Positions 6,045-62,189 are shown, counted from the stretch's first letter. The stretch: 64,000 nucleotides of DNA from Mobula birostris (GCF_030028105.1 NC_092389.1:19579180-19643179); one strand, 5' to 3'. The notes: a model not told the origin generated them from the sequence alone. Translations and numbers: made by a program.

Positions 6045-6535
6045 AGAGTATCAGCATGGCATGGTTTGTAATACTCTGAATCAGAAGATTGTGGGTTTGC
6101 AGCACTTTCCAGAAACCTTTGCACAAAAGGGTAGGCAGACACTTTAGTGCAATGCTAAAACCGCGCACAACTCTATGAGGTGCCTTCTTTCAGATGAGGC
6201 ATTACATTAGGCCCTTGTTTTTATTGACTTATATGGACTTACCATTCTTTTATGTAGAAGGAAAGGTATCCTTGGTCTCTTGACCGTGTTTATTCTTCAT
6301 TCAACATATTCAAATATAAACTAACTGGCCATTATCACTTTGCTGTTTTTTGGTGAAAAATCACTTATCTCTATTTCCCTCCTCACAGATGCAGCCTGCC
6401 ATGTTGAGTATCCTCTGCATTTTATGTCCTTATATCACTTTGCTGTTTGGGCGATCCTGTAGTGAATAAGTTAGCCGCCATGTCCTGTGACTACATTTCT
6501 CAAGTACCTCACTGGTTCTAAAGCAGTTTGAGATT
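6045..6535 (+). mobile_element. Old DeuSINE (SacSINE1-like), interrupted by an 84-bp insert
   Basis: Recognised by resemblance: head CTCTGAATCAGAAGATTGTGGGTTTG, GGTGCCTTCTTTCAGATGAG, ATTATCACTTTGCTGTTT, GTGACTACA. Insert 6349-6432 sits between two 16-bp direct repeats. Confidence 0.65.
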
Positions 6536-7029
6536 TTGTTAGGCAACACTTCCTATACTTCTCTAACTAAACAATATCACTTGGTTTCCCTTACAGCACC
6601 TAGCGGGAAAATTCCACTTTCTGCTAAAGTCAAAGCACTTCAAATTCTGTTCTGGCTCAGTATTCCAAAAGAGAATGCAATCATCAAATCCTTCAGATTT
6701 AGGAGTTGCAAGTACCTTGAATGAAGCCAGCATAACTGTTCAGAAAATATGTTCCTCCCTATAATAAGCAATGCTAAAATTAAGTTCTCTTTTAACACTT
6801 CTTCCATTCTGACCTCTTGAACAGGACAGAATAGTTTAATTATCTCATCAATGACAGACATGCCTTTAGGTCATCCTAAGTCCCTCAATTCTGAATGTCC
6901 CCTCCTAAATCTCTCTACGTAGTTGTGTCTCTCTCTTAAGCCATTTAATAACAACTACCTCTTTGCCATTGATTTTATGTGTCTGTCCAAATGTACCTTC
7001 GTGCCAAATTTTATTTTATGCATATTTTA

Positions 7030-7480
7030 TGCATTTAGCGATACAGCGTGGTGTAGGCCTACCGGGCCATCATGTCGTGCTATTCCAGCAACCCCAATTA
7101 ATCCTAACCTAATCACAGGACAATGTACAATGACCAATTAACTTACTCGAGCTGACCGGTGGTATAGTGGCATCAGCGCCAGACTTGGAGGCGAGTGGTC
7201 CCGGGTTCGAATCTGCTGCTGGCTCGAGCCAGCAACTCAGCCTCATAAAAAACAGACAAAATGATAAAGAAATGGCGAGACTGCCACCTGATGCGCCACA
7301 AGGCGTGGAGAGGAATAACGTAACAATTAACCTACTCAGTATATCTTGGAATGTGGGAGGAAACTGGAGCACCCGGGAAAACCACGGGGAGGACGTACAG
7401 AGACTCCTTACAGAACGGCGCCGGAATTGAACTCCAAACTCCGGAATGCCCCGAGCTGTAATAGCATCGTTTGATAACAT
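7030..7480 (-). mobile_element. HE1/V-SINE-like SINE hosting a nested SINE
   Basis: Same V-domain-like core as 3212-3522 on the minus strand, split at 7149-7323. Confidence 0.75.
7149..7323 (+). mobile_element. 175-bp tRNA-derived SINE with 14-bp TSD (copy 2 at 23761-23935)
   Basis: A box TGGTATAGTGG, B box GGTTCGAATC. Flanked by CAATTAACTTACTC (7135-7148) and CAATTAACCTACTC (7324-7337). Confidence 0.85.
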
Positions 7481-8709
7481 CCCTGAGAAGTGGTTTGGAA
7501 TATTTTCTGGATATTAAGTTTGTGAATAAAATATAGATAATGTGTACTATTTTAGAAGCTTAGCCCTACATAAAGCACGACTGAAGGCAATTCCATCATA
7601 ATGACAGATTCAAAGTATTATGGAGATAATCAAAATTTTTGTTGAAACATCTTTTATAAGTAAGCATTTCAAAAAAACAATGAATCAATCAATACAAATG
7701 GCATCAAGAGTTTAAACTATACACTTCGTGTAACTCCTTGAGTGGCAGCAACACGTTCCTTTTAATCTCTTCTTTGAGTTTTGCATCATACCTTAAGAAC
7801 CAAAATCAATTCGTAGCCTTCACAATTTTAGTAAACGCAATACTTGTTATGATTAATCTCCTCTCATAATTTAAACCTAGGGGTCTAGATGCCATTCTGA
7901 TAAAGTTGCATGTCATTTCATCTAATGTTGTAACGTGCATGTCTTTGATCATAAGCAATATATGTTGTTTTAATATTACTAAATTTTATAGCATGTGACT
8001 AACAGCTCTCTGGATTGTAATGGTAACTATATTAAGTTCCAGAGAGAAACTCTTGAGGAATCCTTGAATAAAAGTCAAACCTTGATCTCTATATGTACCA
8101 TGGGCATTTATCTGCATGTTTTGCAAATGGACTTCGTTGGTCGTTAAGAATCTATAGAGAACTCATACTACACAAAGGGAATTTAGGAGTGTTCCCCAAG
8201 ATCTGTTCAAAGTGCTCCTGGTATCTAATCACATCTTTATATAGCTGAGGCATAACTTCTACCCCACTGGATTCTGCATATAAAAAAATTACATCCAATC
8301 AGCTTTCTGATTGCTTTCTGTACCTGATTGTGACACTTTACTGAACATAAAGCCCCAACTTTCTTCTTCATCGGAAGTTCTCCATTTGAGGTCATTCAGG
8401 TACAAAACAATAGCTTTATCTCAGTGTAAATTGAAATCCATTTGCCACATTTATAAAATACAATCTCCAACATGGATGCAGACCCAGCATGGTTGAACAT
8501 TGGGATTCAGACTTACTAAAATAAAAAAATGAAGCCAAAAAGTGAAAAAAAATCAGTAGGTACCTGTTTACCATCTAAGCATATTTACATTTTAGACTTT
8601 TAGATGCCATTATACAAATGCTAGTTTCAATCTTCCAAAGTGTACTTTAATTACCATGAAATACTTATTATCTTTGTAGTCTGTTCGGATTTATTCAGGA
8701 CTTATGGAA

Positions 8710-8864
8710 TTATGTGAATATAGGAGTTATTAATTCAAATGAGAACCAGTCCTCAGGAAATGCAATCTGTCCACAAGCTTCCATTGATATTTTGTGGCCC
8801 ATGGCACCAGCTATGGGGTTAGGGTCATGGTCATAGGGATATTCTAATTCTGTCCCGTTTAAAA
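8710..8864 (-). CDS. Second copy of the candidate terminal exon
   Basis: Matches 25322-25476 at offset 16612; AATAAA at 8695-8690. Confidence 0.25.
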
Positions 8865-9690
8865 CTATGCAGGGGAAGACAACAGATGAACTGGTGATCA
8901 TGGAAAACTTCAGAATGAGATCAGGAAGGCATTAAGGTCCATGTATAGGATTTTCAAGCAATGGCTGCAATAATCTATGTTTTTCTCTTTAAGATATTAA
9001 TTATGGTACATAAGGACATGAATCATAATTGTATGTTTAACACATGAAAAGGCTATTTGATGAAATTATTTCTCTTTCAGCACACTGCCACAAATACTGT
9101 ATGTAAGATTACTCATTCCATTATGGAATTTTGAAGGGTACTTCACAGTATCAAGAAGCAATCAGTCCAACAGGCTTGGAGAGTGGGCAAAGTTTCCACC
9201 ATCTGCTACAGTTAACTAGAGCATGGAGGGATGTTCTGCTCAAAGAAACTTTGATAACTGTCTAACAGCATCGGCACTGGCTTAGCTGCCTTCTGACTCT
9301 AGTTTCTGCCATTTTTAATGTACTGTATCCCAGATTTGTTGCAAGAGCGCACGAGTCAAACCAAAAAATTCAGTCAATAACAATTTTACTGTGAATGATG
9401 ATGAAAGGCTGTGCAGAGCTTCCAGACAACACCCATGAGCACTTTAAAATATTACTACTGAATCTTTAATACTGCCTGTATTTGTGGAATAGACAAACCA
9501 AGTGTTCTTTTATAGTTTCTCTAGCAACACTATGCATAATGCCCTACTTATTAATTGTAAGTTAAAATTGGCCTGGTTAGTATTAATCTCAACCCTATAG
9601 CAATAAGAGAGATCTGATATAAATATACCCTGATGCATTTGTGGTAAAGTAATGTGCAGAACTGAATACAAGCACAAATATGTTTTCAAA

Positions 9691-10099
9691 CCACAAGCAA
9701 GAGAAAATCTGCAGATGCTAGAAATCCGAGCAACACACACAAAATGCTGAAAGAACTCAGCAGGCCAGGCAGTATCTACGGAAAAAAGTACAGTCGCCGT
9801 TTCAGGCCGAAACCCTGCACCTCAGTGAGACTCGCCATAGATCAGGAGACCGCTTTGCCGAGCATCTATGCCAGAACAAGCAGGATCTCCCAGTAGTCAA
9901 CCATTTCAATTCGACTTCACATTCCCATTCTGATATGTCCATCCATGGCCTCCTCCACTGTCGTGATGACAGTCCTGACGAAGGGTTCCGGCCCGAAACG
10001 TCGACCAATCTTTTCCACGGATGCTGCCCGACCTGCTGAGTTCCTCCAGCACGTTGTGAGTGTTGCTTTGACCCCAGCATCTGCAGATTATTTTGTGTG
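9691..10099 (+). mobile_element. Penelope-like module: GIY-YIG fragment between inverted terminal-repeat arms
   Basis: 9820-9965 is a decayed GETR..GDRFAEHL..DLPV..HFN GIY-YIG segment, the same family as 58264..58533. Arms at about 9695-9816 and 9982-10099 are reverse complements. Confidence 0.8.
9971..10005 (+). ncRNA. Minimal type-I hammerhead ribozyme motif, core intact
   Basis: aGTC-CTGACGA-A-GGG ttccgg CCC-GAAA-CG-TC-GAC: conserved core, stem II, palindromic stem III, GUC cleavage triplet, and GTC/GAC stem I. Confidence 0.75.
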
Positions 10100-10199
10100 A
10101 TGAAGCTAAATATAGGTTTGTGGAACAACACCTTATATTCTGTTTGGGTATATAACATCTTGGTGGAACATATATTCCGTTTGGGTATATAACTCCATT

Positions 10200-10460
10200 T
10201 TCCATCCCTTTTTTCCCTCCCTATCTCACCTCATCTCACCAATCAACTTCCCAGCTCTTCACTTCATTCCACCCCACCCCAATCCAGGTTTCACCTATCA
10301 CCTGGCATTTCTCTCTCCCATCCTCCCACCTTTTAAAACTACTCATCTTTTTTTTTTCTCCAGTCCTGCCGAAGGGTTTCGGTCCAAAACGTCAACTGTA
10401 CTTTTTTCCATAGATGCTGCCTGGCCTGCTGAGTTCCTCCAGCAGTTTGTGCGTTTTGCT
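10200..10460 (+). mobile_element. Penelope-like 3' end with decayed hammerhead motif
   Basis: Pyrimidine tract, then agtcCTGCCGAAGGGTTTCGGTCCAAAACGTCAACT, then the family terminal sequence. Confidence 0.7.
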
Positions 10461-10529
10461 ACAACAAATGTTTCATTACCCAGAGACACATTTTCTCCAT
10501 CTTGCTGAATTTTTGAAAAAGTCTCCAAA

Positions 10530-11440
10530 TATCCATGGCTTATACTTCAATGTCATTCTGTGTGTGCTGCTTTGTTGCCTCATGGATGTGTGCTTAGCCC
10601 ACTGCTCTACTCTCTACACTCATGACTGTGTGGCTAAGGACAGTTCAAGTACCACCTACAAATTTGCTGATGGCACCACCATTATGGGTGGAATCTCAGT
10701 TCATGATGAAAAATTGTATAGAAGAGATCTCTCTGGTTGAATAGATCAGCTGGTTGAATGATGTTGGAACAACAACTTCTTACTCAACAACAGAAAGACC
10801 AAAAAATTGATTGTGGACCTCAGTAAGGGTCAGTTAGAAGAACACACACCAGTCCTCATTGAGGGGTCAGTGCTGGGAAGGATGAGCAGCTACAAGTTCC
10901 TGGGTGTCAACATCTCCAAGAATCTATCCTGGGCTCAGCACATTCATACAATCATGGAGAAGGCACACCAATGGCTTTACCTCATAGATTTTGTATATCA
11001 TTGAAGACTTCTACAAATTACTAAAGATATACAGTGGAGAGCATTCTGACTGGTTGTATCACAGCTTGGTACAGAAACACCAATGCACAGGATTGCAAGA
11101 GGAGTATATCACGGGCAGAACCTCCCCCACCATCGTGGAGACCTTCAAGAGGCAGTACCTCAAGAGGCTGAATCCATCATTAAGGACCTTCAACATTTGG
11201 GACATGTCCTCATCTTGTTTCTACCATCAGGATGGAGGAAACAGCCTGAAGATCCACAACCAAGAATTAGGAAGAGCTTCTGCCCCTTCTACTCAGATTT
11301 CTAAATAGTCCATGAGCATTAATTAATTACTTCCTTTTTCTTACTTTTTTTTAATTGATAGTAATTTAAAGCTTTGCACTGTACTGCTGCCACAAAAATT
11401 ACACGTGTCAGTGATAAGAAACCTGAATCTGATGCTGAAG
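10530..11440 (+). mobile_element. Degenerate Rex1-like LINE 3' part
   Basis: YKFADGTTIMG (YADD-derived motif), IVDL and SYKFLGV in ORFs 10414..10740 and 10807..11004, with many frameshifts. Confidence 0.75.
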
Positions 11441-11459
11441 TACAGGAAGCATTACATGA

Positions 11460-11670
11460 TCACAAATACAAAAGATTCTGCAGATGCTGGAAATCCAAAG
11501 CAACACACACAAAATGCTGGAGGAACTCAGCACCTATAGAAATGAATAAACAGTCAACCTTTCAGACCGAGACCCTTCTTCAGGACTGAAAATGAAGGGG
11601 AAGATCCCAGAATAAAAAGATGCGGGGGTAGGGAAAGGTGGTGATAGGAGAAGCCAGGTGGGTAGATTAC
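11460..11670 (-). mobile_element. Penelope-like 3' end, antisense
   Basis: CACAAAATGCTGGAGGAACTCAGC family sequence, a decayed hammerhead on the minus strand at about 11550-11588, and a purine-rich tract. Confidence 0.7.
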
Positions 11671-13289
11671 ACAACATGACATCTTCCTGTTGTGGTAACC
11701 ACAGAAAATTATGTGGTACCACTGAGCTAACAGAAAGGTGTTTTACAATGGTTGTAGCCAAAGTTTCCTCATTCAATCATCATGAGCAAAATCAGACAAT
11801 GCAGTCATTCTTTAGTTGACTATCTTGCTAAATGCTAATTATCTGTCCTATTTCCATGGTGAATAAGTGTAACAGTATATCTGGGGAAAAATACCCATTG
11901 TAAAATGCTGTGAAATATTCTGAGAATGCCATGAGGGCTTTTTAAGTGCTTGCCTGAAGTGTTTTGAGCTCACTGATATCTGACTTAAATAATTACTGAT
12001 AAATGATTCTGATTGATACTTAAGTTTTTGATTTGAAAATGAGTTGTTACTCATTACAAGGTTATTTTCCAGAGCCAGTGCTATGCTTTTATCAATCTAG
12101 CAGAAAATGGCTGAAATGGCTCCTTTCGGTTCTTAGAAAATGCAACTAAAGTACCTCGGTTAGAAAGATAGCCCACAGCCCAACTTATGCTCAAGTTTAG
12201 ATCACAACTCTTGGACAAGTTATTTATTTCTTTCACTGGGTACAAGTGACAATTGTACCTCTTTAATTTTGTGCTTCTTTTAATGATTTAATAAAACTTA
12301 TGCCTTATGATGAATTTACTGAAATTTACGTGCTCTAAATTCATCAGTTTTTGGACAAATGTTGAGCAATGCATTACATCACATAAAGCACCAAGCACTT
12401 GGAGTGTCACTCAAAAATTTGAAGAAATGGACAAAAGCATATCCCTGTGTAACAAAGGATTTGATCAATTTGTGATTGTTACTCAGTTCAGGATGTCGAT
12501 TTACTGCAAATGCACCAGGGTACATTTATATCTGCCATAAATTTCATTTATATCTTCCAAACATTGACAATTGATTAAATGGTCAAATGAAATGTTTCAT
12601 AGTACGGTTTATAGTAATCTTTATGTGAAAGATATTCTGCATTCATTTAATGCAAACCTTAACTTTTTTAAAGAAGGGATCCTTATGCTCCACAACCGCT
12701 GGACTAAGTGTGTAAATGTAGGAAAAGTAAATGTGCTAGGTTTTCTGAAATTGACTCCTTCTGCCCTAGGCCACGAACTTATCAATCACCCCTTGTATGA
12801 ATCAACATTGGTAAGAATCATGACGAGCACACATAAAGAAAATGTGTTCTTTTAAGTGTTAAGAACGTAATAGTGTAGATGTTTGAAAGTGGCAATGTGG
12901 CCATACTGATAATAAGAACACAATCAAAATTAAGCACATGAAATGGATATTTTCTCTAAGGGAAATATTTAAAAACAACTAACTTCTTCAAGAAAAGAAT
13001 AAATAAAATCTGCAAATCTGCAAATGAAAAGGCTTTTTTGTTAAGGCTAAGCATGAGGAATACGTGCATAATGGCTCAGACAGATAAAGATAAAGAACCG
13101 TTAAGTTATCAGCAGAAATAATACATATACTGTCATATTTTTTACTACATAACCCAAAATCATGCATTCATAATGAGATCAGCAGCATAGTTTACCAATT
13201 TAAATAGAAAGTGCTTTTGGTCAGTTAATTGACAATAATTACATTAATATATTAAAACGTGAATATGTCCATTTATGAATTGATCACAA

Positions 13290-13610
13290 TAATCAATTGT
13301 TGATGGGTTTATTATTGTCACGTGTACTGAGATACAGTAAAAAATTGGTCTTTCGTACATTCACTCGGATGAAATTATTGCAACAGTGCATTAAGGTAGG
13401 ACAAGGTAAAACAGTAACACAATGCAGAATAGAGTATTACAATTACAGAGAAAGTGCAGCACAGGTAGGCAATAAGGTACAAGATTATAAAGAGATAGAT
13501 TATGAGGTCAAGAATCCATCTTGTTGAAATAAGGATCCATTCAATAGATCAATAGTGGGATAGAAGCTGTCCTTGAGCTTGGTGGTATATGCTTTCAGGA
13601 TTCCACGTAG
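13290..13610 (-). mobile_element. Rex1/L2-like LINE 3' end
   Basis: TTTATTATTGTCAC...GATACAGT complement of the tail type also seen at 48430-48490 and 53845+. Confidence 0.55.
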
Positions 13611-13729
13611 GGGAGATGGGGAAAACACATGTTCACACAACTATATTTATTTAAAGTGGTTTCACAAAATCTAATATTAGAAATGATAGACAACAATAAA
13701 ATATTATCAGATAAGGGTTAGGAAGTCTG

Positions 13730-14310
13730 TCTGATGTAGTCTGATGAAAGATCTTGAGCCAATACATCAACTGTATATTTTGCTCTATTTTTGCTTCCTG
13801 ACCTGTTGAGTTCCTCCAGCACTTTGCGTGTGTTGCTCATGATTTCTAGCATCTGCAGAATCTCTTATGTTTAGAAAATGAACTTTCAATTGGAAGATTA
13901 AGTAATAAATTGGGGTAGGAGGAACTACAAAAGCTTTAAATAGAGCATTAAAATATCAGAGAACAGAAATAAATTAAGTAAGAATTAAGAAATTATTCCA
14001 AAAACCAAGGATTTAAGAGTGAACATCAAATAAAAACATTGGACATTACAAACTAAAATTTAAGAAAACATTAGACCTTGATGTTATGATTAGAAATCTT
14101 AGTCAGTATAGGCTGGGGATGGAACTGTTTAATATGCTCAGATTGATATGTTGACACATTTGGCAACATTCCTAATATATGATTATTCAGGTTAATGAAC
14201 AGAAATATTTTTGAGCAACACACACAAAATGTTGGAGGAACTCAGCAGGTCAGGCAACATCTATGGAAAGGAGTATAGTCAACATTTCAGGCCAAGAACC
14301 TTCATCAGAT
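13730..14310. mobile_element. Two opposed Penelope-like terminal fragments (about 13730-13870 on +, 14215-14310 on -)
   Basis: The family sequence appears in both orientations with decayed CTGATGA...GAAA motifs. Confidence 0.6.
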
Positions 14311-14474
14311 CTCAATTTTTTTTGAGCTGGAAGGAAGGGAAAATATATTTAATGAAATAGGACAATTTCTCTAAGGGGCGCTTTTGGTAGGACACATACA
14401 ATGGAGCTGGGCCAGTTTCGGAGATGACTTCCTTGTGAAACTCATTGGAGTCAAGCAATTTAAAGAGATAAAGA

Positions 14475-14790
14475 TTAAAGATTAGCTTTATTTGTTACAT
14501 GAACATTGAAGCATCGAAACATACAGTGAAATGCGTCTTTTGCATCAATGACCAACAGGGTCATAGGATGTGCTGGGGGCAGCCCACTGGTGTTGCCATC
14601 CTTCCAAGACTAATATAGCATGGCCATAGCATAACTTAGTAACCACAAGCCATACATCTTTGGAATGTGGAAGGAAACCAGAGCTGCTGGAGGAAACCTA
14701 TGCAGTCACAGGCAGAACATGCAAACTCCTTAAACTCCAATCTTGAAGGTGGAGGTATAAAGCACTACGGTAATCATTACACTGCCATCC
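14475..14790 (-). mobile_element. HE1/V-SINE-like SINE
   Basis: Parallels 3212-3522 (AGATTAGCTTTATTTG...GGATGTGCTGGG...GGAGGAAACC...GCAAACTCC). Confidence 0.65.
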
Positions 14791-17784
14791 TACAATCTAT
14801 AAGCATACACAATCCATATTTCAAAAATGGCACTGCACAGGATCCAATATCAGTTATTTCCTATGTGTCCTCATTCCTGTTTTGGAAAGAGTATGATTGT
14901 TGACAAAAATTCAACAATCTCAACAAATTCAGTTATTTACATAACTGGCTTGGGGACTGTGAAATTATATATGCACTAATAATTTTTAGTTCCTAAAGCC
15001 ACTGCTATAAATTCACCATTTCCATTAAAAATGTACTTGAAAATTTGTGATATTGCACACAGTAAATTGTCCTTGTTTTCAAATAGCGACAATAAAAATT
15101 GCACAATACCAGCAGCCTTCATACAGTCAATCAGATTTGTGACTACTTGAATTGGACCATAACCTGAACCAACCAAAAATAATCTTTGCAAAGACTGGAA
15201 CAGATGACATCCTCATTGTAACATCTTATCTTTCCCAGTTTACTTAAAAATTTTTTAATAATATGGTTTGATTGATTATAAACTGATTTTTGTAACGATG
15301 CATTTCTTAGATATTACTGATCTGTAATAATAGGTGACATGTTGCGATAAACAAAGGAATTTTTGGAATGGAATATTACCTCCCAAGCTATCTTATTTAA
15401 AAACATAACTTGCACACTATATGCTATCAATTTCTACGATTGTAGATCTCAATCCAGACATTCCTCTAATCTTCACATTTACAGGCTTGGTGAACTTTTG
15501 TTAACCTCTATTTGTAATCAAAATAAAAATAATAAAAATGTAATAATTTGACAAACTTTCATTGCACAGATGTTGTTTGACCCAGTGAGTTCCTCCAGCA
15601 GATTGATTTTTGTTCCATATTCCAACATCTGCAGTCTCTTGTGGCTCCGAAGTGTAGCAATTGACAGCTTGACAATTAATTGATAGCGATGTACTATTTT
15701 CTACTGCGGTCACCAAAGCCTATGCTAAAGGCATATCCAGCTGCATACCACACACTGTTCTCACTTACAATTGCTGCAGTTAACCACACTTCTTAAAGTC
15801 ATAGAACTGTGGCTCCAAACCAGAGCGAGCAGAAATGCAAATACAAAGCTACCACCCTTTCCAGTTATTGCAAGGTTTTTTTCTATGATTTCTTGTAACA
15901 GGAGCAAAATGTGATTTAATATATGAAGGCTGCGATTGTACTATGGAATTCTTATCTCTACTGTTCTTTCACAAGGGCGATTTAATGTATAGAACACCAG
16001 ATCTTTTCAAATACTGTCCTATTATCCCATCAAAACTCTTTAATCAGAAAAGACTGTATCAAGGGGCTGGATACATTACTATTAAGATTAAAAAGCCTAC
16101 TTCATTTGCTTCAGTAATTAACAATGAAGGGGAAAACATTTCTGGCGTTCAGTGTCCATTATCCTGAATCTGAGTTAGGATGATTACTCTGATGATAAAT
16201 TAATCAGTTACTTTGTAGATGTATTTTGTTAATTTAAAAGAGTAATCAAATATGTAAGTTGTTTGATTCATTTTTAATTGTTACATAATTTTCTTCAATT
16301 TTAATTTGGCCTTGTTACATGTAGGATAATAATACTTAGCTCATCTTCCCTGAGTATGATAATCATTGGAGCAGATATTCTTCTTGTCTTCTAGTGAAAA
16401 ATGGGTGGAATGTCTTCATTTCTGACCAAGATAATCCTAGTCAATATTTCGTCCATGTGTGTCTGTCATAGTGGTTGTCATTTACTGTCGCTGCTGCATG
16501 TAAATTTCTACCTTTTCATTAAGTCGTGCCTTAAAACCTGTTGTGCCCACTGACCAGCAGTCTATCAGCCCCCAAGTAAACTATAAGACAAGCCATGCAA
16601 AATGGAAAGGGCAACCCTTTGGCATAGAATACAACTCGTCACCAAATCCTAATGTAGTGTCAGGGGACTCATCCAGTATGGAATTCACGGCAGAAAGATA
16701 TAAACCAGAGTCAAGAAAGCAACACAATTTTCAGAGAGAACCTTGAAAACCCAAATTTTGGAATATCTTGCCAAAGAATGGAGAATAAATCTGTTTCAAA
16801 TTCAGTCCAGAAAACCAGAGAAAGGCCACTTAGATGCAGGATATCCTCTGATTTTGCTTAAAACATTTATTAAAATTAATTTCTATTCTCTTTTGGTAGG
16901 GATGTGTATGGCAATATTAATATAAAATGGAAACACTACAATTGAGTAAGCTGTATCTATTAGACATGAAACTTTTAAAGATATATATTCCCAGCATACG
17001 TTTTAAATATCTTCTCATGGGCTGCACAATGTTTCTAATGGATTAACACCACCATAGATGTAATTCAGATAAATTTCCTCTAACCTTGGTCCTGCTTATA
17101 CAAGACACAGAGCAGGATATCTTTCTTTAAGAAATCCATGGCAAAGAGTAGTACATCATGGAAACTGGCCTACCAGCCAAACCGCTCCAACCAAAATGTC
17201 CAACTAAAGACTGTGTGCATTCACTTTGTCTATGGCCCAAATTTATGAAATGTATTTAAATGCATTTAAATTTTAGATGCTGAGATAGCACCATACTTGA
17301 GTTGAGAAAATGTTGTATATTAATTTTGAAAAGACCATAGGTGACGATGAGAAACCCAAGAACTAGTGGTCAGATCACATCACGCTTTGGTTACAAAATC
17401 CTGTAAACTGCACTCAATCTGCATTGCAGAGGGAGAAAAAGGTTTCCTCCGTCATGAGGATTTTTGGTGATCTCATTGCACCCTTGGAGCTTAGAACAGG
17501 AAATTCATGGGTGATGGGGGACCTGGGGCCCAAGAGGAGCAAGGGGAGAAAATTCAGCACGCTGATGATGAAACATTAGTCATTATGAGAACATAAATTT
17601 AAATCACTCTCTATGCACAGTGGAAAAATACACCAATGTCATCTAGTTAATTTAAGCTTGAATTTCACATATAGATATAATAGTCTGAGTGACACTCAGT
17701 ATGTTCTTCTATATCAAGAATAATAATATTACTATTTAGAAAAGTCTGTGGTGTTCCTCCATCTAATCTGCTCCTACTCTGCTG

Positions 17785-25321: not shown

Positions 25322-25476
25322 TTATGTGAATATAGGAGTTATTAATTCAAATGAGAACCAGTCCTCAGGAAATGCAATCTGTCCACAAGCTTCCATTGAT
25401 ATTTTGTGGCCCATGGCACCAGCTATGGGGTTAGGGTCATGGTCATAGGGATATTCTAATTCTGTCCCGTTTAAAA
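25322..25476 (-). CDS. Candidate terminal cytoplasmic exon (F)LNGTELEYPYDHDPNP...TPIFT* (duplicate copy nearest the gene)
   Basis: Strong acceptor tctgttgtcttcccctgcatAG, open in phase 1 for 50 codons to TAA, AATAAA on the minus strand at 25307-25302. No homology support. Confidence 0.3.
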
Positions 25477-26582
25477 CTATGCAGGGGAAGACAACAGATG
25501 AACTGGTGATCATGGAAAACTTCAGAATGAGATCAGGAAGGCATTAAGGTCCATGTATAGGATTTTCAAGCAATGGCTGCAATAATCTATGTTTTTCTCT
25601 TTAAGATATTAATTATGGTACATAAGGACATGAATCATAATTGTATGTTTAACACATGAAAAGGCTATTTGATGAAATTATTTCTCTTTCAGCACACTGC
25701 CACAAATACTGTATGTAAGATTACTCATTCCATTATGGAATTTTGAAGGGTACTTCACAGTATCAAGAAGCAATCAGTCCAACAGGCTTGGAGAGTGGGC
25801 AAAGTTTCCACCATCTGCTACAGTTAACTAGAGCATGGAGGGATGTTCTGCTCAAAGAAACTTTGATAACTGTCTAACAGCATCGGCACTGGCTTAGCTG
25901 CCTTCTGACTCTAGTTTCTGCCATTTTTAATGTACTGTATCCCAGATTTGTTGCAAGAGCGCACGAGTCAAACCAAAAAATTCAGTCAATAACAATTTTA
26001 CTGTGAATGATGATGAAAGGCTGTGCAGAGCTTCCAGACAACACCCATGAGCACTTTAAAATATTACTACTGAATCTTTAATACTGCCTGTATTTGTGGA
26101 ATAGACAAACCAAGTGTTCTTTTATAGTTTCTCTAGCAACACTATGCATAATGCCCTACTTATTAATTGTAAGTTAAAATTGGCCTGGTTAGTATTAATC
26201 TCAACCCTATAGCAATAAGAGAGATCTGATATAAATATACCCTGATGCATTTGTGGTAAAGTAATGTGCAGAACTGAATACAAGCACAAATATGTTTTCA
26301 AACCACAAGCAAGAGAAAATCTGCAGATGCTAGAAATCCGAGCAACACACACAAAATGCTGAAAGAACTCAGCAGGCCAGGCAGTATCTACGGAAAAAAG
26401 TACAGTCGCCGTTTCAGGCCGAAACCCTGCACCTCAGTGAGACTCGCCATAGATCAGGAGACCGCTTTGCCGAGCATCTATGCCAGAACAAGCAGGATCT
26501 CCCAGTAGTCAACCATTTCAATTCGACTTCACATTCCCATTCTGATATGTCCATCCATGGCCTCCTCCACTGTCGTGATGAC

Positions 26583-26617
26583 AGTCCTGACGAAGGGTTC
26601 CGGCCCGAAACGTCGAC
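26583..26617 (+). ncRNA. Minimal type-I hammerhead ribozyme motif (duplicate copy)
   Basis: Identical to 9971-10005. Confidence 0.75.
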
Positions 26618-29600: not shown

Positions 29601-32600
29601 CAAGAAAAGAATAAATAAAATCTGCAAATCTGCAAATGAAAAGGCTTTTTTGTTAAGGCTAAGCATGAGGAATACGTGCATAATGGCTCAGACAGATAAA
29701 GATAAAGAACCGTTAAGTTATCAGCAGAAATAATACATATACTGTCATATTTTTTACTACATAACCCAAAATCATGCATTCATAATGAGATCAGCAGCAT
29801 AGTTTACCAATTTAAATAGAAAGTGCTTTTGGTCAGTTAATTGACAATAATTACATTAATATATTAAAACGTGAATATGTCCATTTATGAATTGATCACA
29901 ATAATCAATTGTTGATGGGTTTATTATTGTCACGTGTACTGAGATACAGTAAAAAATTGGTCTTTCGTACATTCACTCGGATGAAATTATTGCAACAGTG
30001 CATTAAGGTAGGACAAGGTAAAACAGTAACACAATGCAGAATAGAGTATTACAATTACAGAGAAAGTGCAGCACAGGTAGGCAATAAGGTACAAGATTAT
30101 AAAGAGATAGATTATGAGGTCAAGAATCCATCTTGTTGAAATAAGGATCCATTCAATAGATCAATAGTGGGATAGAAGCTGTCCTTGAGCTTGGTGGTAT
30201 ATGCTTTCAGGATTCCACGTAGGGGAGATGGGGAAAACACATGTTCACACAACTATATTTATTTAAAGTGGTTTCACAAAATCTAATATTAGAAATGATA
30301 GACAACAATAAAATATTATCAGATAAGGGTTAGGAAGTCTGTCTGATGTAGTCTGATGAAAGATCTTGAGCCAATACATCAACTGTATATTTTGCTCTAT
30401 TTTTGCTTCCTGACCTGTTGAGTTCCTCCAGCACTTTGCGTGTGTTGCTCATGATTTCTAGCATCTGCAGAATCTCTTATGTTTAGAAAATGAACTTTCA
30501 ATTGGAAGATTAAGTAATAAATTGGGGTAGGAGGAACTACAAAAGCTTTAAATAGAGCATTAAAATATCAGAGAACAGAAATAAATTAAGTAAGAATTAA
30601 GAAATTATTCCAAAAACCAAGGATTTAAGAGTGAACATCAAATAAAAACATTGGACATTACAAACTAAAATTTAAGAAAACATTAGACCTTGATGTTATG
30701 ATTAGAAATCTTAGTCAGTATAGGCTGGGGATGGAACTGTTTAATATGCTCAGATTGATATGTTGACACATTTGGCAACATTCCTAATATATGATTATTC
30801 AGGTTAATGAACAGAAATATTTTTGAGCAACACACACAAAATGTTGGAGGAACTCAGCAGGTCAGGCAACATCTATGGAAAGGAGTATAGTCAACATTTC
30901 AGGCCAAGAACCTTCATCAGATCTCAATTTTTTTTGAGCTGGAAGGAAGGGAAAATATATTTAATGAAATAGGACAATTTCTCTAAGGGGCGCTTTTGGT
31001 AGGACACATACAATGGAGCTGGGCCAGTTTCGGAGATGACTTCCTTGTGAAACTCATTGGAGTCAAGCAATTTAAAGAGATAAAGATTAAAGATTAGCTT
31101 TATTTGTTACATGAACATTGAAGCATCGAAACATACAGTGAAATGCGTCTTTTGCATCAATGACCAACAGGGTCATAGGATGTGCTGGGGGCAGCCCACT
31201 GGTGTTGCCATCCTTCCAAGACTAATATAGCATGGCCATAGCATAACTTAGTAACCACAAGCCATACATCTTTGGAATGTGGAAGGAAACCAGAGCTGCT
31301 GGAGGAAACCTATGCAGTCACAGGCAGAACATGCAAACTCCTTAAACTCCAATCTTGAAGGTGGAGGTATAAAGCACTACGGTAATCATTACACTGCCAT
31401 CCTACAATCTATAAGCATACACAATCCATATTTCAAAAATGGCACTGCACAGGATCCAATATCAGTTATTTCCTATGTGTCCTCATTCCTGTTTTGGAAA
31501 GAGTATGATTGTTGACAAAAATTCAACAATCTCAACAAATTCAGTTATTTACATAACTGGCTTGGGGACTGTGAAATTATATATGCACTAATAATTTTTA
31601 GTTCCTAAAGCCACTGCTATAAATTCACCATTTCCATTAAAAATGTACTTGAAAATTTGTGATATTGCACACAGTAAATTGTCCTTGTTTTCAAATAGCG
31701 ACAATAAAAATTGCACAATACCAGCAGCCTTCATACAGTCAATCAGATTTGTGACTACTTGAATTGGACCATAACCTGAACCAACCAAAAATAATCTTTG
31801 CAAAGACTGGAACAGATGACATCCTCATTGTAACATCTTATCTTTCCCAGTTTACTTAAAAATTTTTTAATAATATGGTTTGATTGATTATAAACTGATT
31901 TTTGTAACGATGCATTTCTTAGATATTACTGATCTGTAATAATAGGTGACATGTTGCGATAAACAAAGGAATTTTTGGAATGGAATATTACCTCCCAAGC
32001 TATCTTATTTAAAAACATAACTTGCACACTATATGCTATCAATTTCTACGATTGTAGATCTCAATCCAGACATTCCTCTAATCTTCACATTTACAGGCTT
32101 GGTGAACTTTTGTTAACCTCTATTTGTAATCAAAATAAAAATAATAAAAATGTAATAATTTGACAAACTTTCATTGCACAGATGTTGTTTGACCCAGTGA
32201 GTTCCTCCAGCAGATTGATTTTTGTTCCATATTCCAACATCTGCAGTCTCTTGTGGCTCCGAAGTGTAGCAATTGACAGCTTGACAATTAATTGATAGCG
32301 ATGTACTATTTTCTACTGCGGTCACCAAAGCCTATGCTAAAGGCATATCCAGCTGCATACCACACACTGTTCTCACTTACAATTGCTGCAGTTAACCACA
32401 CTTCTTAAAGTCATAGAACTGTGGCTCCAAACCAGAGCGAGCAGAAATGCAAATACAAAGCTACCACCCTTTCCAGTTATTGCAAGGTTTTTTTCTATGA
32501 TTTCTTGTAACAGGAGCAAAATGTGATTTAATATATGAAGGCTGCGATTGTACTATGGAATTCTTATCTCTACTGTTCTTTCACAAGGGCGATTTAATGT

Positions 32601-34396
32601 ATAGAACACCAGATCTTTTCAAATACTGTCCTATTATCCCATCAAAACTCTTTAATCAGAAAAGACTGTATCAAGGGGCTGGATACATTACTATTAAGAT
32701 TAAAAAGCCTACTTCATTTGCTTCAGTAATTAACAATGAAGGGGAAAACATTTCTGGCGTTCAGTGTCCATTATCCTGAATCTGAGTTAGGATGATTACT
32801 CTGATGATAAATTAATCAGTTACTTTGTAGATGTATTTTGTTAATTTAAAAGAGTAATCAAATATGTAAGTTGTTTGATTCATTTTTAATTGTTACATAA
32901 TTTTCTTCAATTTTAATTTGGCCTTGTTACATGTAGGATAATAATACTTAGCTCATCTTCCCTGAGTATGATAATCATTGGAGCAGATATTCTTCTTGTC
33001 TTCTAGTGAAAAATGGGTGGAATGTCTTCATTTCTGACCAAGATAATCCTAGTCAATATTTCGTCCATGTGTGTCTGTCATAGTGGTTGTCATTTACTGT
33101 CGCTGCTGCATGTAAATTTCTACCTTTTCATTAAGTCGTGCCTTAAAACCTGTTGTGCCCACTGACCAGCAGTCTATCAGCCCCCAAGTAAACTATAAGA
33201 CAAGCCATGCAAAATGGAAAGGGCAACCCTTTGGCATAGAATACAACTCGTCACCAAATCCTAATGTAGTGTCAGGGGACTCATCCAGTATGGAATTCAC
33301 GGCAGAAAGATATAAACCAGAGTCAAGAAAGCAACACAATTTTCAGAGAGAACCTTGAAAACCCAAATTTTGGAATATCTTGCCAAAGAATGGAGAATAA
33401 ATCTGTTTCAAATTCAGTCCAGAAAACCAGAGAAAGGCCACTTAGATGCAGGATATCCTCTGATTTTGCTTAAAACATTTATTAAAATTAATTTCTATTC
33501 TCTTTTGGTAGGGATGTGTATGGCAATATTAATATAAAATGGAAACACTACAATTGAGTAAGCTGTATCTATTAGACATGAAACTTTTAAAGATATATAT
33601 TCCCAGCATACGTTTTAAATATCTTCTCATGGGCTGCACAATGTTTCTAATGGATTAACACCACCATAGATGTAATTCAGATAAATTTCCTCTAACCTTG
33701 GTCCTGCTTATACAAGACACAGAGCAGGATATCTTTCTTTAAGAAATCCATGGCAAAGAGTAGTACATCATGGAAACTGGCCTACCAGCCAAACCGCTCC
33801 AACCAAAATGTCCAACTAAAGACTGTGTGCATTCACTTTGTCTATGGCCCAAATTTATGAAATGTATTTAAATGCATTTAAATTTTAGATGCTGAGATAG
33901 CACCATACTTGAGTTGAGAAAATGTTGTATATTAATTTTGAAAAGACCATAGGTGACGATGAGAAACCCAAGAACTAGTGGTCAGATCACATCACGCTTT
34001 GGTTACAAAATCCTGTAAACTGCACTCAATCTGCATTGCAGAGGGAGAAAAAGGTTTCCTCCGTCATGAGGATTTTTGGTGATCTCATTGCACCCTTGGA
34101 GCTTAGAACAGGAAATTCATGGGTGATGGGGGACCTGGGGCCCAAGAGGAGCAAGGGGAGAAAATTCAGCACGCTGATGATGAAACATTAGTCATTATGA
34201 GAACATAAATTTAAATCACTCTCTATGCACAGTGGAAAAATACACCAATGTCATCTAGTTAATTTAAGCTTGAATTTCACATATAGATATAATAGTCTGA
34301 GTGACACTCAGTATGTTCTTCTATATCAAGAATAATAATATTACTATTTAGAAAAGTCTGTGGTGTTCCTCCATCTAATCTGCTCCTACTCTGCTG

Positions 34397-37300
34397 CAGA
34401 AACATAGAAAACCTACAGCACAATACAGGCCCTTCGGCCCACAAAGCTGTGCCAAACATGTCCTTACCTTAGAAATACCTAGGCTTACCCATAGCCCTCT
34501 ATTTTTCTAAGCTCCATGTATCCATCCAGGAGTCTCTTAAAAAACCCTATCGTTTCCATCTCCACCACCGCCAATGGCAGCCCATTCCTCACACTCACCA
34601 CTCCCTGTAAAAAACTTACCCCTGACATCTCCTCTGTACCTACTTCCAAGCACTTTAAAACTATGCCCTCTCGTGCTAGCCATTTCAGCCCTGAAAAAAA
34701 GCCTCTGACTATCCAGATGATCAATGCCTCTCATTATCTTGTACACCCCTATCAGGTCACCTCTCATCCTCCGTCGCTCCAAGGAGAAAAGGTCAACTTC
34801 ACTCAATCTATAAGGCATGCTCCCCAATCCAGGCAACATCCTTGTAGTTCTCCTCTGCACCCTTTCTATGGTTTCCGCAGCCTTCCTGTAGTGAGGCGAA
34901 TAGAATTGAACACAATACTCCAAGTGCGTCTGACCAGGGTCCTATACAGCTGCAACATTACCTCTCAGCTCTTAAACTCAATCCTACAATTGATGAAGGC
35001 CAATGCACTGTATGCCTTCTTAACCACAGAGTCAACCTGCTTGGCAGCTTTTAGTGTTCTATGGACTCAGACCCCAAGATCCCTCTGATCCTCCACACTG
35101 CCAAGAATCTTACCATTAATGCTATATTCTGCCATCATATTTGACCTACCAAAATAAACCACCTCACACTTATCTGGGTTGAACTCCATCTGTCACTTTT
35201 CAGCCCAGTTTTGCATCCTATCAATGTCCCGCGGTAACCTCTGACAGCCCTCCATACTATCCACAACATCCCAACCTTTGTGTCATCAGCAAACTTACTA
35301 ACCCATTCCACCACTTCCTCATCCAGGTCCTTTATAAAAATCACAAACAAAGAGTAGGGGTCCCAGAACAGATCCCTGAGGCACACCACTGGTCACTGGC
35401 CTCCATGCAGAATATGACCCATCTACAACCACTCTTTGCCTTCTGTGGGCAAACCAGTTCTGGATCCACAAAGCAATGTCCCCTTGGATCCCATACCTCC
35501 TTACTTCCTCAATAAGTCTTGCATGTACTTTACCAAATGCCTTGCTAAAATCCATATACACTACGTCAACAGCTCTACCTTCATCAATGTGTTTAGTCAC
35601 ATCCTCACAAAATTCAATTAGGCTTGTAAGGCACGACCTGCCTTTGACAAAGCCATGCTGACTATTCCTAATCGTATTATGCCTCTCCAAATGTTGATAA
35701 GTCCTGCATCTCATGATCTTCTCCATCAACTTACCAACCACTGAAGTAAGACTCACCGGTCTATAATTTCCTGGGCTATCCTTACTCCCTTTCTTGAATA
35801 AAGGAACAACATCCGCAACCCTCCAATCCTCTGGAACCTCTCCCGTCCCCATCGATGATGCAAAAATCATCGCCAGAGGCTCAGCAATCTCCTCCCTCAC
35901 CTCCCACAGTAGCCTGGGGTACATCCCGTCTGGTCGCAGTGACTTATCCAACTTGATGCTTTCCAAAAGCTCCTGCACATCCTCTTTCTTAATATCTACA
36001 TGCTCAAGCTTTTCAGTCTGCTGCAAGTCATCTCTATGATCACCAAGATCCTTTTCCGTAGTGAATATGAAGCAAAGTATTCATTAAGTACCTCTGCTAT
36101 CTCCTCCAGTTCCATACACACTTTTCCACTGTCACACTTGATTGGTCCTATTCTCTCACATCCTATCCTCTTGCTCTTCACATTCTTGTAGAATGCCTTG
36201 GGGCTTTCCTTAATCCTGTCCACCAAGGCCTTCTCATGGCCCCTTCTGGCTCTCCTAATTTCATTCTTATGCTCCTTCCTGCTAGCCTTATAATCTTCTA
36301 GATCTCTATCATTATCTAGTTTTTTGAACCTTTCGTAAGCTCTTCTTCTCTTCTTGACTAGATTTACAACAGCCTTTGTACACCATGATTTCTGTAACCT
36401 ACCATCCTTTCCCTGTCTCATTGGAACATACCTACGCAGAACCCCACGCAAATATCTCCTGAACATTTGCCGCATTTCTTCCGTACGTTTCCTTGAGAAC
36501 ATCTGTTTCCAATTTATGCTTCCAAGTTCCTGCCTGATGGCTTCATATTTCCCCTTACTCCAATTAAGCATTTCCCTAACTTGTCTGTTGCTATCCCTCT
36601 CCAATGCTATGGTAAAGGAGATAGAATTGTGATCATTATCTCCAAAATGCTCTCCCACTGAGAGACCTGACCCTGACCAGGTTCATTTCCTAATACCAGA
36701 TCAAGTACAGCCTTTCCTCTTGTAGGTTTATCTACATATTGTGTCGAGAAACCTTCCTGAACACACCTAACAAACTCCACTCCATCTAAACCCCTCACTC
36801 TAGGGAGATGCCAATCAATATTTGGGAAATTAAAATCTCCCACCACAACAACCCTGTTATTATTACTCCTTTCCAGAATCTGCCTCCCTATCTGCTCTTC
36901 GATATCCCTGTTACTATTGGGTGTTCTATAAAAAACACCCAGTAGAGTTATTGACCCCTTCCTGTTCCTAACTTCCACCCACAGAGACTCAGTAGACAAC
37001 CCCTCCATGACCTCCTCCTTTTCTGCAGCTGTGACACTATCCCTGAGCAACATTGCCATGCCCCCACCTCTCTTCCCTCCTTCCCTGCCCGTTCTGAAAC
37101 ACCTAAAGCCAGGCACTTGAAGTAGCCATTCCTGCCCCTGCACCATCCAAGTCTCTGAAATGGCTACAACATTATAGCTCCAATGCTGATCCACACTCTA
37201 TGCTCATCCACTTTGTTCATAATACTCCTTGCATTAAAATAGACACATCTCAAACCATCGATCTGAACGCGTCCCTCTCTATCACCTGCCTATGCTCCCT

Positions 37301-39201
37301 TTCGCCCTGTCTCCAAGCTTTCTCTATTTGTGAGCCAAGCTCCCTTTTCCTCTGTCACTTCAGTTCTGTTCCCACCCCCCAGCAATCCCAGTTTAAACTC
37401 TCCCCAATAACCTGAGCAAACATCCCCGCCAGGATATTGGTCCCCCTGGGATTCAAGTCCTTTTTCTACAGGTCATTCTGATGGAATGAAGGGATAGGTA
37501 AATAGGGGGAAAAACAGAGGACAATGATTAACTTATAATCAATCACATTGTAAGCACCTTAGCTTACTGCTTTGGACAAGTTTGTGCAGTCAAAAAGAAG
37601 TTTCACTCTGCAACCGGTGACATACTAGTCATTGTTCTCTAAAGATAGACAAAGACTCAAATAAGGAACCATCTGATCTTGCAGAAGCAGCTCAAGATAC
37701 AGCTAAATATGAAGAGTATAGTGTAGGGGCTAGAATGTTCTGGAGAAAAGGGGAAGGGTCCGAATGAGGAACTGATGGGATAGCTTTGGCTTAAAATAAT
37801 TATAACTAACTGACCAATGATTATTTTACATCTAATTGTATCTTTGCATGTGATTGAAATGATTCTAACATTACCTAAACTTGTAATCGTAAGATTTCCT
37901 GCTACCTGATCAATGTTATAAATTGTGGAGAACTGTGCAATTCGGGGGCAGTCTCCGGACTAGCTCCTTTGTGAGATCAGTCTGCAACTTCCCCCATAGC
38001 ATGCTATGAGTAGAGAATAAAGGTTTGAAACAAATTACGTATGTCAGTGTATTTGTGGTACAATTGCTATTGCATCGGGTCCGATCGAGTAAAGACAATT
38101 CCTGCCCCAAAAGAGTTCCCAATGATCCAGAAATCTGAATCCCTGCCCCGTGCTCCAATCCCTCAGCCACGCATTCATCCTCCATCTCATTCTATTCCTA
38201 TACTGACTGTCCTGTGGCACAAGCAGTAATCCCAAGATTACTACCTGTGAGGTCCTGCTTCTCATCTTCCTTCCTAACTCCCTGTGCTTTGTTTTCCTCC
38301 CTTTTCCTACCTATATCGTTGGTACCAATATGTTCCACAACCTCTGGCTGTTCTCCTTCCCACTTCAAGATATCGTGGACGCGATTAGAAACATCCTGGA
38401 CCCTGGCACCTGGGAGGCAAACTACCATCCACGTTTCTTTCCTGCGCCCACAGAATCGCCTCTCTGACTCCTTAACTATAGAGTCCCCTATCACTGCTGC
38501 CATCTTCTTCCTTTTCCTACCCTTCTGAGCCACAGGGCCCGACTCTGTGCCAGAGGCATGACCACTGTTGCTTCCCCCAGGTAGGCCGTCTCCCCTAACA
38601 GTACTCAAACAGGAGTACTTATTGTTAAGAGGAACAGCCACAGGGATACTCTCTAGCACCTGCTTCTTGTCCTTCTCTCTCCTGACTGTTATCTACTTAT
38701 CTGTCTCCCCAGTTCCCGGAGTGACTACCAGCCTATAGCTCCTCTCTATCACCTCTTCACTCTCCCTGACCAGATGAAGGTCATCGAGCTCTATCTCCAG
38801 TTCCCTGAGGCAGTCCCTAAAGAGCTGCAGCTCGACGCACCTGCTGCAGATGTGGCCGTCCGGGAGGCTGGGAGTCTTCAGGACCTCCCACAACTGACAC
38901 CGAGCACAGAAAACTGGCCTCACACACATTCTTTCTGTCTGTATTCTAATCAGATAACCCACCTCGCTTCGACCCTTTATCGCTGAAGCCCCATGGAGCC
39001 ATAGCCTTCCTTCTCTGTCTCCCTCTACTCTATCGGCCGCTCTGTAAAGCTGTCTTCTTTTTAAACTCTTCCCTCTGTTCTCACTGGCCGACCTCCGTGC
39101 ACTTGCGCAGTCGTGCCCCTTCAAACTGCTGAAGAAATAACCGTCACCTTTTCAACTCTGCCCGCTTTAAAACTCTTCCCACTGTTCTCACCGGCTGACC
39201 T
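34397..39201 (-). mobile_element. Duplicate of the near-full-length CR1
   Basis: Same ORFs at offset 16612/16611, with an extra 1-bp deletion in the endonuclease domain. Confidence 0.95.
37479..38097 (+). mobile_element. Duplicate of the solo LTR
   Basis: ATTC TSD at 37475-37478 and 38098-38101. Confidence 0.85.
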
Positions 39202-40194
39202 GTATTTTAAGGCTTCACTTCTTCAAACAGTTAATTATTTCTCAAAGATAACATAAACTATTCTAACATCAACCTGAGAATCATAGTTTTTTTTCCGAAG
39301 TTTGCTTCAAATTATTTTCATTTCAAAAACTTCTTGTGAGAGATTGTAGTAATTTCTCATTAGTCATATTGCCCATAGATCCTGTTAGACAACTTTTGAC
39401 CTCTGCAGCAGAACTAAATAAAACCTATTTTCTTTTAATCCTCTTAATGAGTAACTCCACATCCTGATAGCCTTCTGGAGAATCCATGTTGCAATTTTCC
39501 ATTACTGAATTTCCTCTGCATATAATGCTCTAACTTCAGCAAGTAAAAGAAGTTCACAATCATTCCCTTTTCTTTCACAAAGGTCAACAAGTGTCAGGGG
39601 CTCCTACATCATGTGAATTAATGAAAAACATTTATGTCTCCACAGGCAATACTGAAGAGTTCCATCCTTTGGCCTAATTTACTCATGGATTAAACTACAG
39701 ATTAAAGCCACCCAATCTAAACATTTCCCATAAAATGTCTTCCTTTTATTTTCCAAAGTTTGAAAAATTTCTTAGAATTTTCCACGTTGCTAGTCATATT
39801 ATTTCTTATGCCCTCATAATGTAGATCCTGATTCCAATTTTGCAAATCTTCCAATTCCATATGGTTAGCCATTTTTATATTATTTCATGAATTGCCAAAT
39901 GCTTTATTTAAGTCTGCATTTATTGCCCTTTCCAAGCTGTCCTGGAGAAGGTGATGAGCCACAGAGGTTCCTCTTAGAGAGAATTCACACAGTGTTGTTA
40001 GCTAGCGAGTTCCACCAGTTAGATGTAGTGATTATAAAGGTCTGACTATATACTTCCAGGATGGTGTGTGACTTGGAGGTGAACCAGTAGATGGTAGCAT
40101 TCCAATCTTACTATTTATCAATGAAGAGTAAATAAAATTACCCAATACAAATAGGAGCATTAGTTCTATTGTATTAGTACAATATTGGTAAATG

Positions 40195-41130: not shown

Positions 41131-41184
41131 AATCACTGCAGCTTCTCTCTGGTGTAAAAAAATACTGTAACCTGCTCAACTTGC
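41131..41184 (-). CDS. Ig-superfamily receptor, exon 6: first cytoplasmic exon (G)KLSRLQYFFTPERSCSD
   Basis: Acceptor tattttcaaAG, donor GTAAGT, 54 nt, open in phase 1-1, 692 nt below the TM exon. Support is splice signals and phase only. Confidence 0.65.
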
Positions 41185-62185: not shown

Positions 62186-62189
62186 CGAT

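What the first reader, a model, noticed from the sequence alone, without database searches (positions are those of the whole stretch)
6250..39474. Very recent 16,612-bp head-to-tail duplication (or an assembly false duplication)
The two copies are nearly identical. I found five differences (search not exhaustive): A/T 11275/27887, A/G 12715/29327, T/C 19859/36471, deletion of G20572 in copy 2, and C/T 20974/37585. Two are CpG-to-TpG changes, one in each copy, so both copies carry derived changes. That fits independent drift after duplication or two haplotypes joined in series. Copy-number change next to an immune receptor gene is plausible (inference).
Basis: seen in the sequence. Interest (0 to 1): 0.7.

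Follow-up and report, generated by a model that had tools for sequence, protein, structure and literature searches.

The report
Recent 16.6-kb tandem duplication, real
A 16.6-kb stretch of non-coding, transposon-bearing manta ray DNA sits twice in a row with only five differences; public read-derived contigs indicate the doubling is real and not an assembly slip, but it is an ordinary young structural variant with no gene inside it.

Summary
Copy 1 is 6250-22861 (16,612 bp) and copy 2 is 22862-39472 (16,611 bp). The edges are sharp, share only a 2-bp TT overlap, and there is no N in the window.

The duplication is probably real (about 0.87). In two runs of one sample of the same species, error-free contigs stop exactly at 22863 and start exactly at 22862. 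A k=31 graph simulation predicts those ends only if the junction words are in the reads. In a sister species about 1.9% diverged, contigs run straight through both edges, so that species is single-copy and the duplication is derived. No contig spanning the junction was shown, and read depth was not available.

The unit holds no recognisable gene: 101 ORFs gave no Pfam hit, and there was no Rfam family or tRNA. It carries a decayed high-copy LINE (about 17790-22550, minus strand) and short repeats. It lies about 1.7 kb 3' of an Ig-superfamily receptor gene on the minus strand and does not include it.

The breakpoints share no homology, so unequal crossing-over between repeats is excluded. End joining or replicative template switching at microhomology fits best. 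Its age is about 1.3% of the split from the sister species. The finding is ordinary and of low interest.

The parts
6250..22861 (.). Copy 1 of the duplicated unit (16,612 bp)
   Evidence: Offset comparison and blastn: 99.97% identical to copy 2.
22862..39472 (.). Copy 2 of the duplicated unit (16,611 bp; lacks the G that stands at 20572 in copy 1)
22862..22863 (.). Junction microhomology TT. The same TT stands at 39473-39474 as the first two bases of the right flank.
   Evidence: One search gives the junction contexts. In one search, contigs of runs X1 and X2 end at 22863 and begin at 22862.
17790..22550 (-). Decayed LINE inside copy 1, with apurinic-endonuclease and reverse-transcriptase pieces in broken frames. 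It belongs to a very high-copy family. Its twin in copy 2 lies at about 34402-39161.
   Evidence: One search finds Pfam Exo_endo_phos at 19995-20642 and RVT_1 at 18707-19414; the nearest solved protein is LINE-1 ORF2p (E about 1e-15); word depth is 1e5-1e6 up to about 22550 and about 15 beyond it; the 3' end matches other LINE tails from 17786.
6928..7518 (.). High-copy short interspersed repeat inside the unit. Its twin in copy 2 lies at 23540-24130.
   Evidence: word depth is about 5e4-2.6e5 at 23540-24130 in all three species, with many contigs skipping about 200 bp (23754-23958).
11275..11275 (.). Difference 1: A in copy 1, T at 27887 in copy 2
12715..12715 (.). Difference 2: A in copy 1, G at 29327 in copy 2
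19859..19859 (.). Difference 3: TpG in copy 1, CpG at 36471 in copy 2 (inside the LINE)
20572..20572 (.). Difference 4: a G present in copy 1 and absent in copy 2. It is not in a homopolymer. It shortens a LINE endonuclease ORF from 215 to 195 aa.
20974..20974 (.). Difference 5: CpG in copy 1, TpG at 37585 in copy 2 (inside the LINE)
41131..49377 (-). Neighbouring Ig-superfamily receptor gene, which is not part of the duplication. Its exons include V-set at 48465-49022, C1/C2-set at 44367-44783 and I-set at 42330-42827.
Evidence: Pfam.

Best explanation
This is a real, evolutionarily young tandem (head-to-tail) duplication of 16.6 kb of non-genic DNA in the giant manta ray lineage. It arose from a single non-homologous event: the end of the unit (...GATAGCC-TT) was joined to its own start (TT-ATGTAG...) at a 2-bp microhomology. 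The likely route was end joining after breaks on sister chromatids or a replicative template switch (FoSTeS/MMBIR type), not unequal crossing-over between repeats. After the event the two copies picked up four substitutions, two of them at methylated CpG, and one 1-bp indel. The unit carries a dead LINE, short repeats and otherwise unique non-coding sequence, so the event is most likely selectively neutral. Shown here: the anatomy, the lack of breakpoint homology, the lack of genes, the single-copy state in a sister species, and contig ends that require a graph branch at the junction. Inferred: the repair pathway, neutrality, and the age.
For: (1) Searches show two copies at 99.97% identity with sharp edges. 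They share only a TT overlap, and there is no N between them.

(2) laid Logan contigs of runs X1 and X2 (organism A, sample S1) on the junction. In both runs a whole 343-nt contig lies at 22521-22863 and a whole 873-nt contig at 22862-23734, each with 0 mismatches. Their other ends sit at high-copy repeat borders.

(3) simulated a k=31 graph. If the duplication is real, unitigs end at 22863 and start at 22862, exactly as observed. If there is a single copy with two haplotypes, unitigs run on into the flanks (to 44997 and from 4693).

(4), organism B (about 1.9% diverged): a 1096-nt contig matches 22528-22871 with its first 341 nt and continues for 755 nt. A 2377-nt contig matches 22862-23734 with its last 876 nt and has 1501 nt before that. 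There is no break at either edge, so this species is single-copy and the flanks are not high-copy repeats.

(5): 600 bp of each flank match nothing else in the window; the local alignment score between the breakpoint neighbourhoods is 17, against a shuffled mean of 16.8 +/- 2.2, so there is no homology.

(6) The published hallmarks of false duplications are a gap or depth-gap between the copies and half depth (PMC9516828). No gap is present here.

(7) The 1-bp indel is not in a homopolymer, so it is unlikely to be a long-read consensus error.

(8) The junction bin 22752-22948 carries extra contig depth in X1 and X2 beyond the two listed contigs. That excess is nearly absent in organisms B and C. 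This is weak support, because depth from contigs is unreliable.
Against: No contig or read spanning the junction was actually displayed. The expected 58-nt junction unitig (22834-22891) is not among the few pieces listed, so the presence of the junction is inferred from contig ends. Read depth relative to the flanks could not be measured, because only contigs were available and only one read-laying run was allowed. Sample S1 may be the very individual that was assembled, so it is not independent of the assembly's reads. The junction-word run search was inconclusive. Five differences in 16.6 kb (0.03%) is also in the range of allelic divergence.
Confidence: 0.87

Rival explanations
1. This is an assembly false duplication: the two haplotypes of a single-copy 16.6-kb locus were placed in series inside one contig.
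For: The five differences (0.03%) look like allelic variants, and each copy carries one CpG-to-TpG change. Depth was not measured. No junction-spanning contig was listed. False heterotype duplications are a known error class (PMC9516828).
Against: There is no gap or N between the copies. The junction has no overlap beyond 2 bp, so an overlap-based assembler had nothing with which to join the haplotypes. Contigs from two runs end and start exactly at 22863/22862, which a single-copy genome does not produce. Contigs of the sister species pass through both edges, so the breaks are not caused by flanking repeats.
Confidence: 0.08
2. The duplication is real but was formed by non-allelic homologous recombination between interspersed repeats (for example LINE copies) that flank the unit.
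For: The window is full of LINE copies on the minus strand. One of them fills the last 4.8 kb but 310 bp of the unit.
Against: Both breakpoints lie in low-copy sequence. In one search, word depth is about 15 at 22555-23539, and the LINE ends near 22550. The breakpoint neighbourhoods share no homology. Identity drops to random within one base at both edges. NAHR would leave a repeat at each edge and at the junction.
Confidence: 0.02
3. The locus is a real tandem array whose true copy number differs from two, either three or more copies collapsed to two or a variant present on only one haplotype. The five 'paralogous' differences would then partly mix allelic and paralogous variants.
For: Nothing here measures copy number. 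A k-mer graph looks the same for 2 or more copies and for a heterozygous duplication.
Against: A contig with two cleanly distinguishable copies and unique flanks is the simplest reading. No third variant state was seen, although the LINE part was too noisy to read.
Confidence: 0.15

Closest known systems
Microhomology-associated tandem duplications (non-homologous end joining / alt-EJ, or FoSTeS/MMBIR replicative template switching), as catalogued among structural variants of human, fly and other genomes (own knowledge)
   Same: It has head-to-tail orientation and a single clean junction with 2 bp of microhomology. There are no flanking repeats, the size is in the kilobase to tens-of-kilobases range, and the copies are near-identical.
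   Different: Nothing is known to differ. The pathway cannot be told apart from sequence alone, and no inserted or templated bases at the junction point specifically to MMBIR.
False heterotype duplication in genome assemblies (Ko et al. 2022, PMC9516828)
   Same: Two adjacent near-identical copies differ by a handful of SNP-like sites.
   Different: There is no assembly gap between the copies, and contig ends in read-derived graphs imply that the junction words exist in the reads. Half depth, the other hallmark, could not be tested.
NAHR-mediated segmental duplication between LINE/SINE copies
   Same: The result is a tandem duplication in a repeat-rich region.
   Different: The breakpoints lie in unique sequence and share no homologous repeat.

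Membership tests
True tandem duplication (as opposed to an assembly false duplication) | The junction sequence exists in the sequencing reads | tested here: met
   This is indirect. In two runs of the same species, whole contigs end at 22863 and start at 22862. The simulation shows this happens only if the junction words are in the graph. No junction-spanning piece was displayed.
True tandem duplication (as opposed to an assembly false duplication) | No assembly gap or depth-gap between the copies | tested here: met
   There is no N in the window. Contigs abut at the junction with 0 mismatches.
True tandem duplication (as opposed to an assembly false duplication) | Read depth over each copy equals that of the flanks (summed depth is twice the flank depth) | not testable with these tools
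   Only Logan contigs were available, with no raw reads.
Microhomology-mediated / non-homologous tandem duplication | Breakpoints share at most a few bases of homology and no repeat lies at the edges | tested here: met
   There is a 2-bp TT overlap. The local alignment of +/-300 bp is no better than shuffled sequence. Neither flank matches anything else in the window.
NAHR-mediated duplication | Homologous repeats in direct orientation at both breakpoints | tested here: not met
Lineage-specific (derived) duplication | A related species has the single-copy arrangement | tested here: met
   Organism B contigs run through both edges for 755 and 1501 nt without a break. The continuing letters were not shown, so their identity with the window's flanks is inferred. 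One supporting detail is that the match extends to 22871, as the right flank would.
Gene duplication (copy-number change of a functional gene) | The unit contains a gene or exon | tested here: not met
   101 ORFs of 45 aa or more in 6250-17800 gave no Pfam hit. Only LINE domains were found in 17800-22861. There was no Rfam family or tRNA. The Ig receptor exons lie outside the unit on the minus strand. Short exons or UTRs without a domain cannot be excluded.

The most novel reading that the evidence does not exclude
The duplication is a segregating copy-number variant that doubles a downstream regulatory region of the adjacent inhibitory Ig-type receptor gene and changes its expression. Immune-receptor loci of rays would then be a hotspot of ongoing non-homologous structural turnover.
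Probability: 0.05. Interest if true: 0.45.

Novelty: new member of a known kind. Interest (0 to 1): 0.15.

Why it matters
The main value is for quality control and annotation. The two copies should not be purged as a false duplication without a read-depth check. Anyone counting LINE copies or mapping reads near the neighbouring Ig receptor gene should know that about 33 kb here is a two-copy region. Biologically it is one datable example of a microhomology-type tandem duplication in a slowly evolving elasmobranch genome. It contains no gene, so no change in gene dosage is expected.

Tried and rejected

(2) The 120-nt junction stretch gave shares of 0.64-0.91 in runs of sample S1 and 0.55 in organism B. 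With 0 or 1 junction-specific words sampled, this cannot show presence or absence and is inconclusive.

(3) The three variant sites inside the LINE (19859, 20572, 20974) could not be read from contigs. At least 1e5-fold word depth from other LINE copies swamped them at the 90% threshold.

(4) Depth comparison with the flanks was not possible, because only contigs were available, read laying allows one call, and the junction stretch contains no flank.

(5) A test for clustering of the differences gave 3 of 5 within 1,115 bp with P = 0.11, and 3 of 5 in the LINE with P = 0.15. Neither is significant.

(6) A mobile-element origin of the whole unit was rejected. Its unique parts are low-copy. There is no target-site duplication and there are no terminal repeats.

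(7) A literature search for the manta assembly method found no description of how this assembly was made.

Full report
**Observation.**
An offset scan of the window and a self-blastn confirm a head-to-tail repeat. Copy 1 is 6250-22861 (16,612 bp) and copy 2 is 22862-39472 (16,611 bp).

- 11275 A / 27887 T
- 12715 A / 29327 G
- 19859 T / 36471 C
- G20572 absent from copy 2 (AAGTG versus AATG, not a homopolymer)
- 20974 C / 37585 T

Two of these are CpG/TpG pairs, one with the TpG in each copy. Identity is 99.97%. Every other repeat pair in the window is 65-85% identical, apart from one 485-bp pair at 93%. The window has no N.

Identity falls to random within one base at both outer edges. The only overlap at the junction is TT: the unit begins TTATGTAG, and the right flank begins TTCTGGAG after ...GATAGCC.

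**What the unit contains.**
The last 4.8 kb of the unit, except for its final ~310 bp, is a decayed LINE on the minus strand at about 17790-22550.
- It has an apurinic-endonuclease piece (19995-20642) and a reverse-transcriptase piece (18707-19414) in separate broken frames.
- Its reverse transcriptase is nearest to LINE-1 ORF2p among solved structures.
- The family is extremely abundant. Contig word depth over 19600-22550 is 1e5-1e6 in three species, against about 15 in the adjacent unique sequence.

A second high-copy short repeat lies at 6928-7518 (twin at 23540-24130).

The remaining 11.5 kb shows nothing recognisable. 101 stop-to-stop ORFs of 45 aa or more on both strands gave no Pfam hit. 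The window has no Rfam family and no tRNA.

I confirmed Ig exons there, all on the minus strand: V-set at 48465-49022, C1/C2-set at 44367-44783 and I-set at 42330-42827. The duplication therefore ends about 1.7 kb beyond the 3' end of that gene and includes none of it.

**Real or artefact.**
Only Logan contigs, not raw reads, were on offer. I laid two runs of the best-holding sample (X1 and X2, organism A, sample S1), one run of organism B and one of organism C on 19600-25500, which is centred on the junction.

- In both X1 and X2, a complete 343-nt contig lies at 22521-22863 and a complete 873-nt contig at 22862-23734, each with no mismatch.
- Their far ends coincide with the borders of the LINE and of the short repeat, where a k-mer graph must break.
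- Their near ends coincide to the base with the duplication boundary.

I simulated k=31 unitigs on the window as assembled and on a single-copy locus with the two copies as haplotypes.
- With the duplication, unitigs end at 22863 and start at 22862, and a 58-nt junction unitig (22834-22891) appears.
- Without it, unitigs run on into the flanks (to 44997 and from 4693).

The observed contig ends therefore require a branch at both edges. That means the junction words are present in the reads of both runs alongside the flank continuations.

The alternative is that the flanks begin with high-copy repeats that break the graph at the same bases. This is unlikely for two reasons:
- 600 bp of each flank match nothing else in a window that holds at least seven LINE copies.
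- In organism B the contigs pass both edges without a break, continuing 755 nt past the unit end and holding 1501 nt before the unit start.

The published hallmarks of false duplications are half depth and an assembly gap or depth-gap between the copies (PMC9516828). The gap criterion is not met here, and the depth criterion could not be tested. An overlap-based assembler also has no overlap with which to join two haplotypes at a junction that shares 2 bp.

I put the real duplication at about 0.87 and an artefact at about 0.08. Copy number (exactly two, and on both haplotypes or one) is untested and cuts across these odds. The weak points are:
- No junction-spanning piece was listed.
- Sample S1 may be the assembled animal.
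- Two attempts to query the junction words directly were uninformative.

**Polarity and age.**
Organism B differs from the window by about 1.9% in the unique parts laid (50 substitutions in 2,659 nt) and is single-copy at both edges. The duplication therefore arose on the manta side after that split.

The copies differ by 4 substitutions in 16,611 sites, or 2.4e-4 (Poisson 95% interval 0.66-6.2e-4). That is 1.3% (0.35-3.3%) of the A-B distance.

In absolute terms, d/2u gives about 1.7e5 generations at the epaulette-shark rate of 7e-10 per site per generation (PMC10587355). At 1e-8 it gives about 1.2e4 generations. Gene conversion between the copies would make it look younger.

CpG observed/expected is 0.30, and CpG positions are 2.3% of sites yet account for 2 of the 4 substitutions. 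This fits ordinary methylation-driven decay. The three differences inside the LINE are not significantly clustered (P about 0.1).

**Mechanism.**
The breakpoints lie in low-copy sequence: 22555-23539 has single-locus depth, and the LINE stops about 310 bp before the unit end. A local alignment of +/-300 bp around the two breakpoints scores no better than shuffled sequence (17 versus 16.8 +/- 2.2). Unequal homologous recombination between repeats is therefore excluded.

A single junction with 2 bp of microhomology and no inserted bases is the usual signature of two processes (established knowledge; the pathway itself is inferred):
- end joining of breaks on sister chromatids
- a replicative template switch (FoSTeS/MMBIR)

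The unit has no gene, so the event is most likely neutral.

**Verdict.**
The suggested connection to the immune receptor is one of position only. This is an ordinary young structural variant, useful to flag for assembly curation and read mapping, and of low biological interest unless it proves to be a polymorphism that affects the neighbouring gene.

Noticed in passing
window 20848-21489 (twin at 37459-38100): Contigs from all three species join 20847 directly to 21490, skipping 642 bases (table 5). Word depth falls from about 1e5 to about 3e3 between 20979 and 21372. Most genomic copies of this LINE family therefore lack a 642-bp segment that this copy carries, either as a subfamily-specific insert or through a common internal deletion.
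   Followed up: no
window 23540-24130 (twin at 6928-7518): This is a short interspersed repeat with word depth of 5e4-2.6e5 in three species. Very many contigs skip about 200 bp (23754-23958), which suggests a composite or two-part SINE-like element. It has no tRNA or Rfam match.
   Followed up: no
window 44857-45340 and 46099-46582: A 485-bp direct repeat at 93% identity lies inside the intron region of the Ig receptor gene. It is by far the closest repeat pair in the window after the duplication. Both copies encode a similar LINE-tail-like ORF.
   Followed up: no
window 41131-49377, minus strand: The Ig-superfamily receptor exons are confirmed on the minus strand: V-set at 48465-49022, C1/C2-set at 44367-44783 and I-set/Ig_3 at 42330-42827. 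LINE reverse-transcriptase fragments (46584-47705) sit in its introns.
   Followed up: partly
window 22448-22483 and 22555-22590: A 36-bp direct repeat (89%) stands at the 5' border of the LINE. A related 26-bp match lies at 54087-54113 on the other strand.
   Followed up: no
whole window: The plus strand has strong negative GC skew over the LINE-rich parts, down to -0.45. This reflects several same-orientation (minus-strand) LINE copies at 1590-2528, 17790-22550, 34402-39161, 46443-47705, 54600-58000 and 61279-62636.
   Followed up: no
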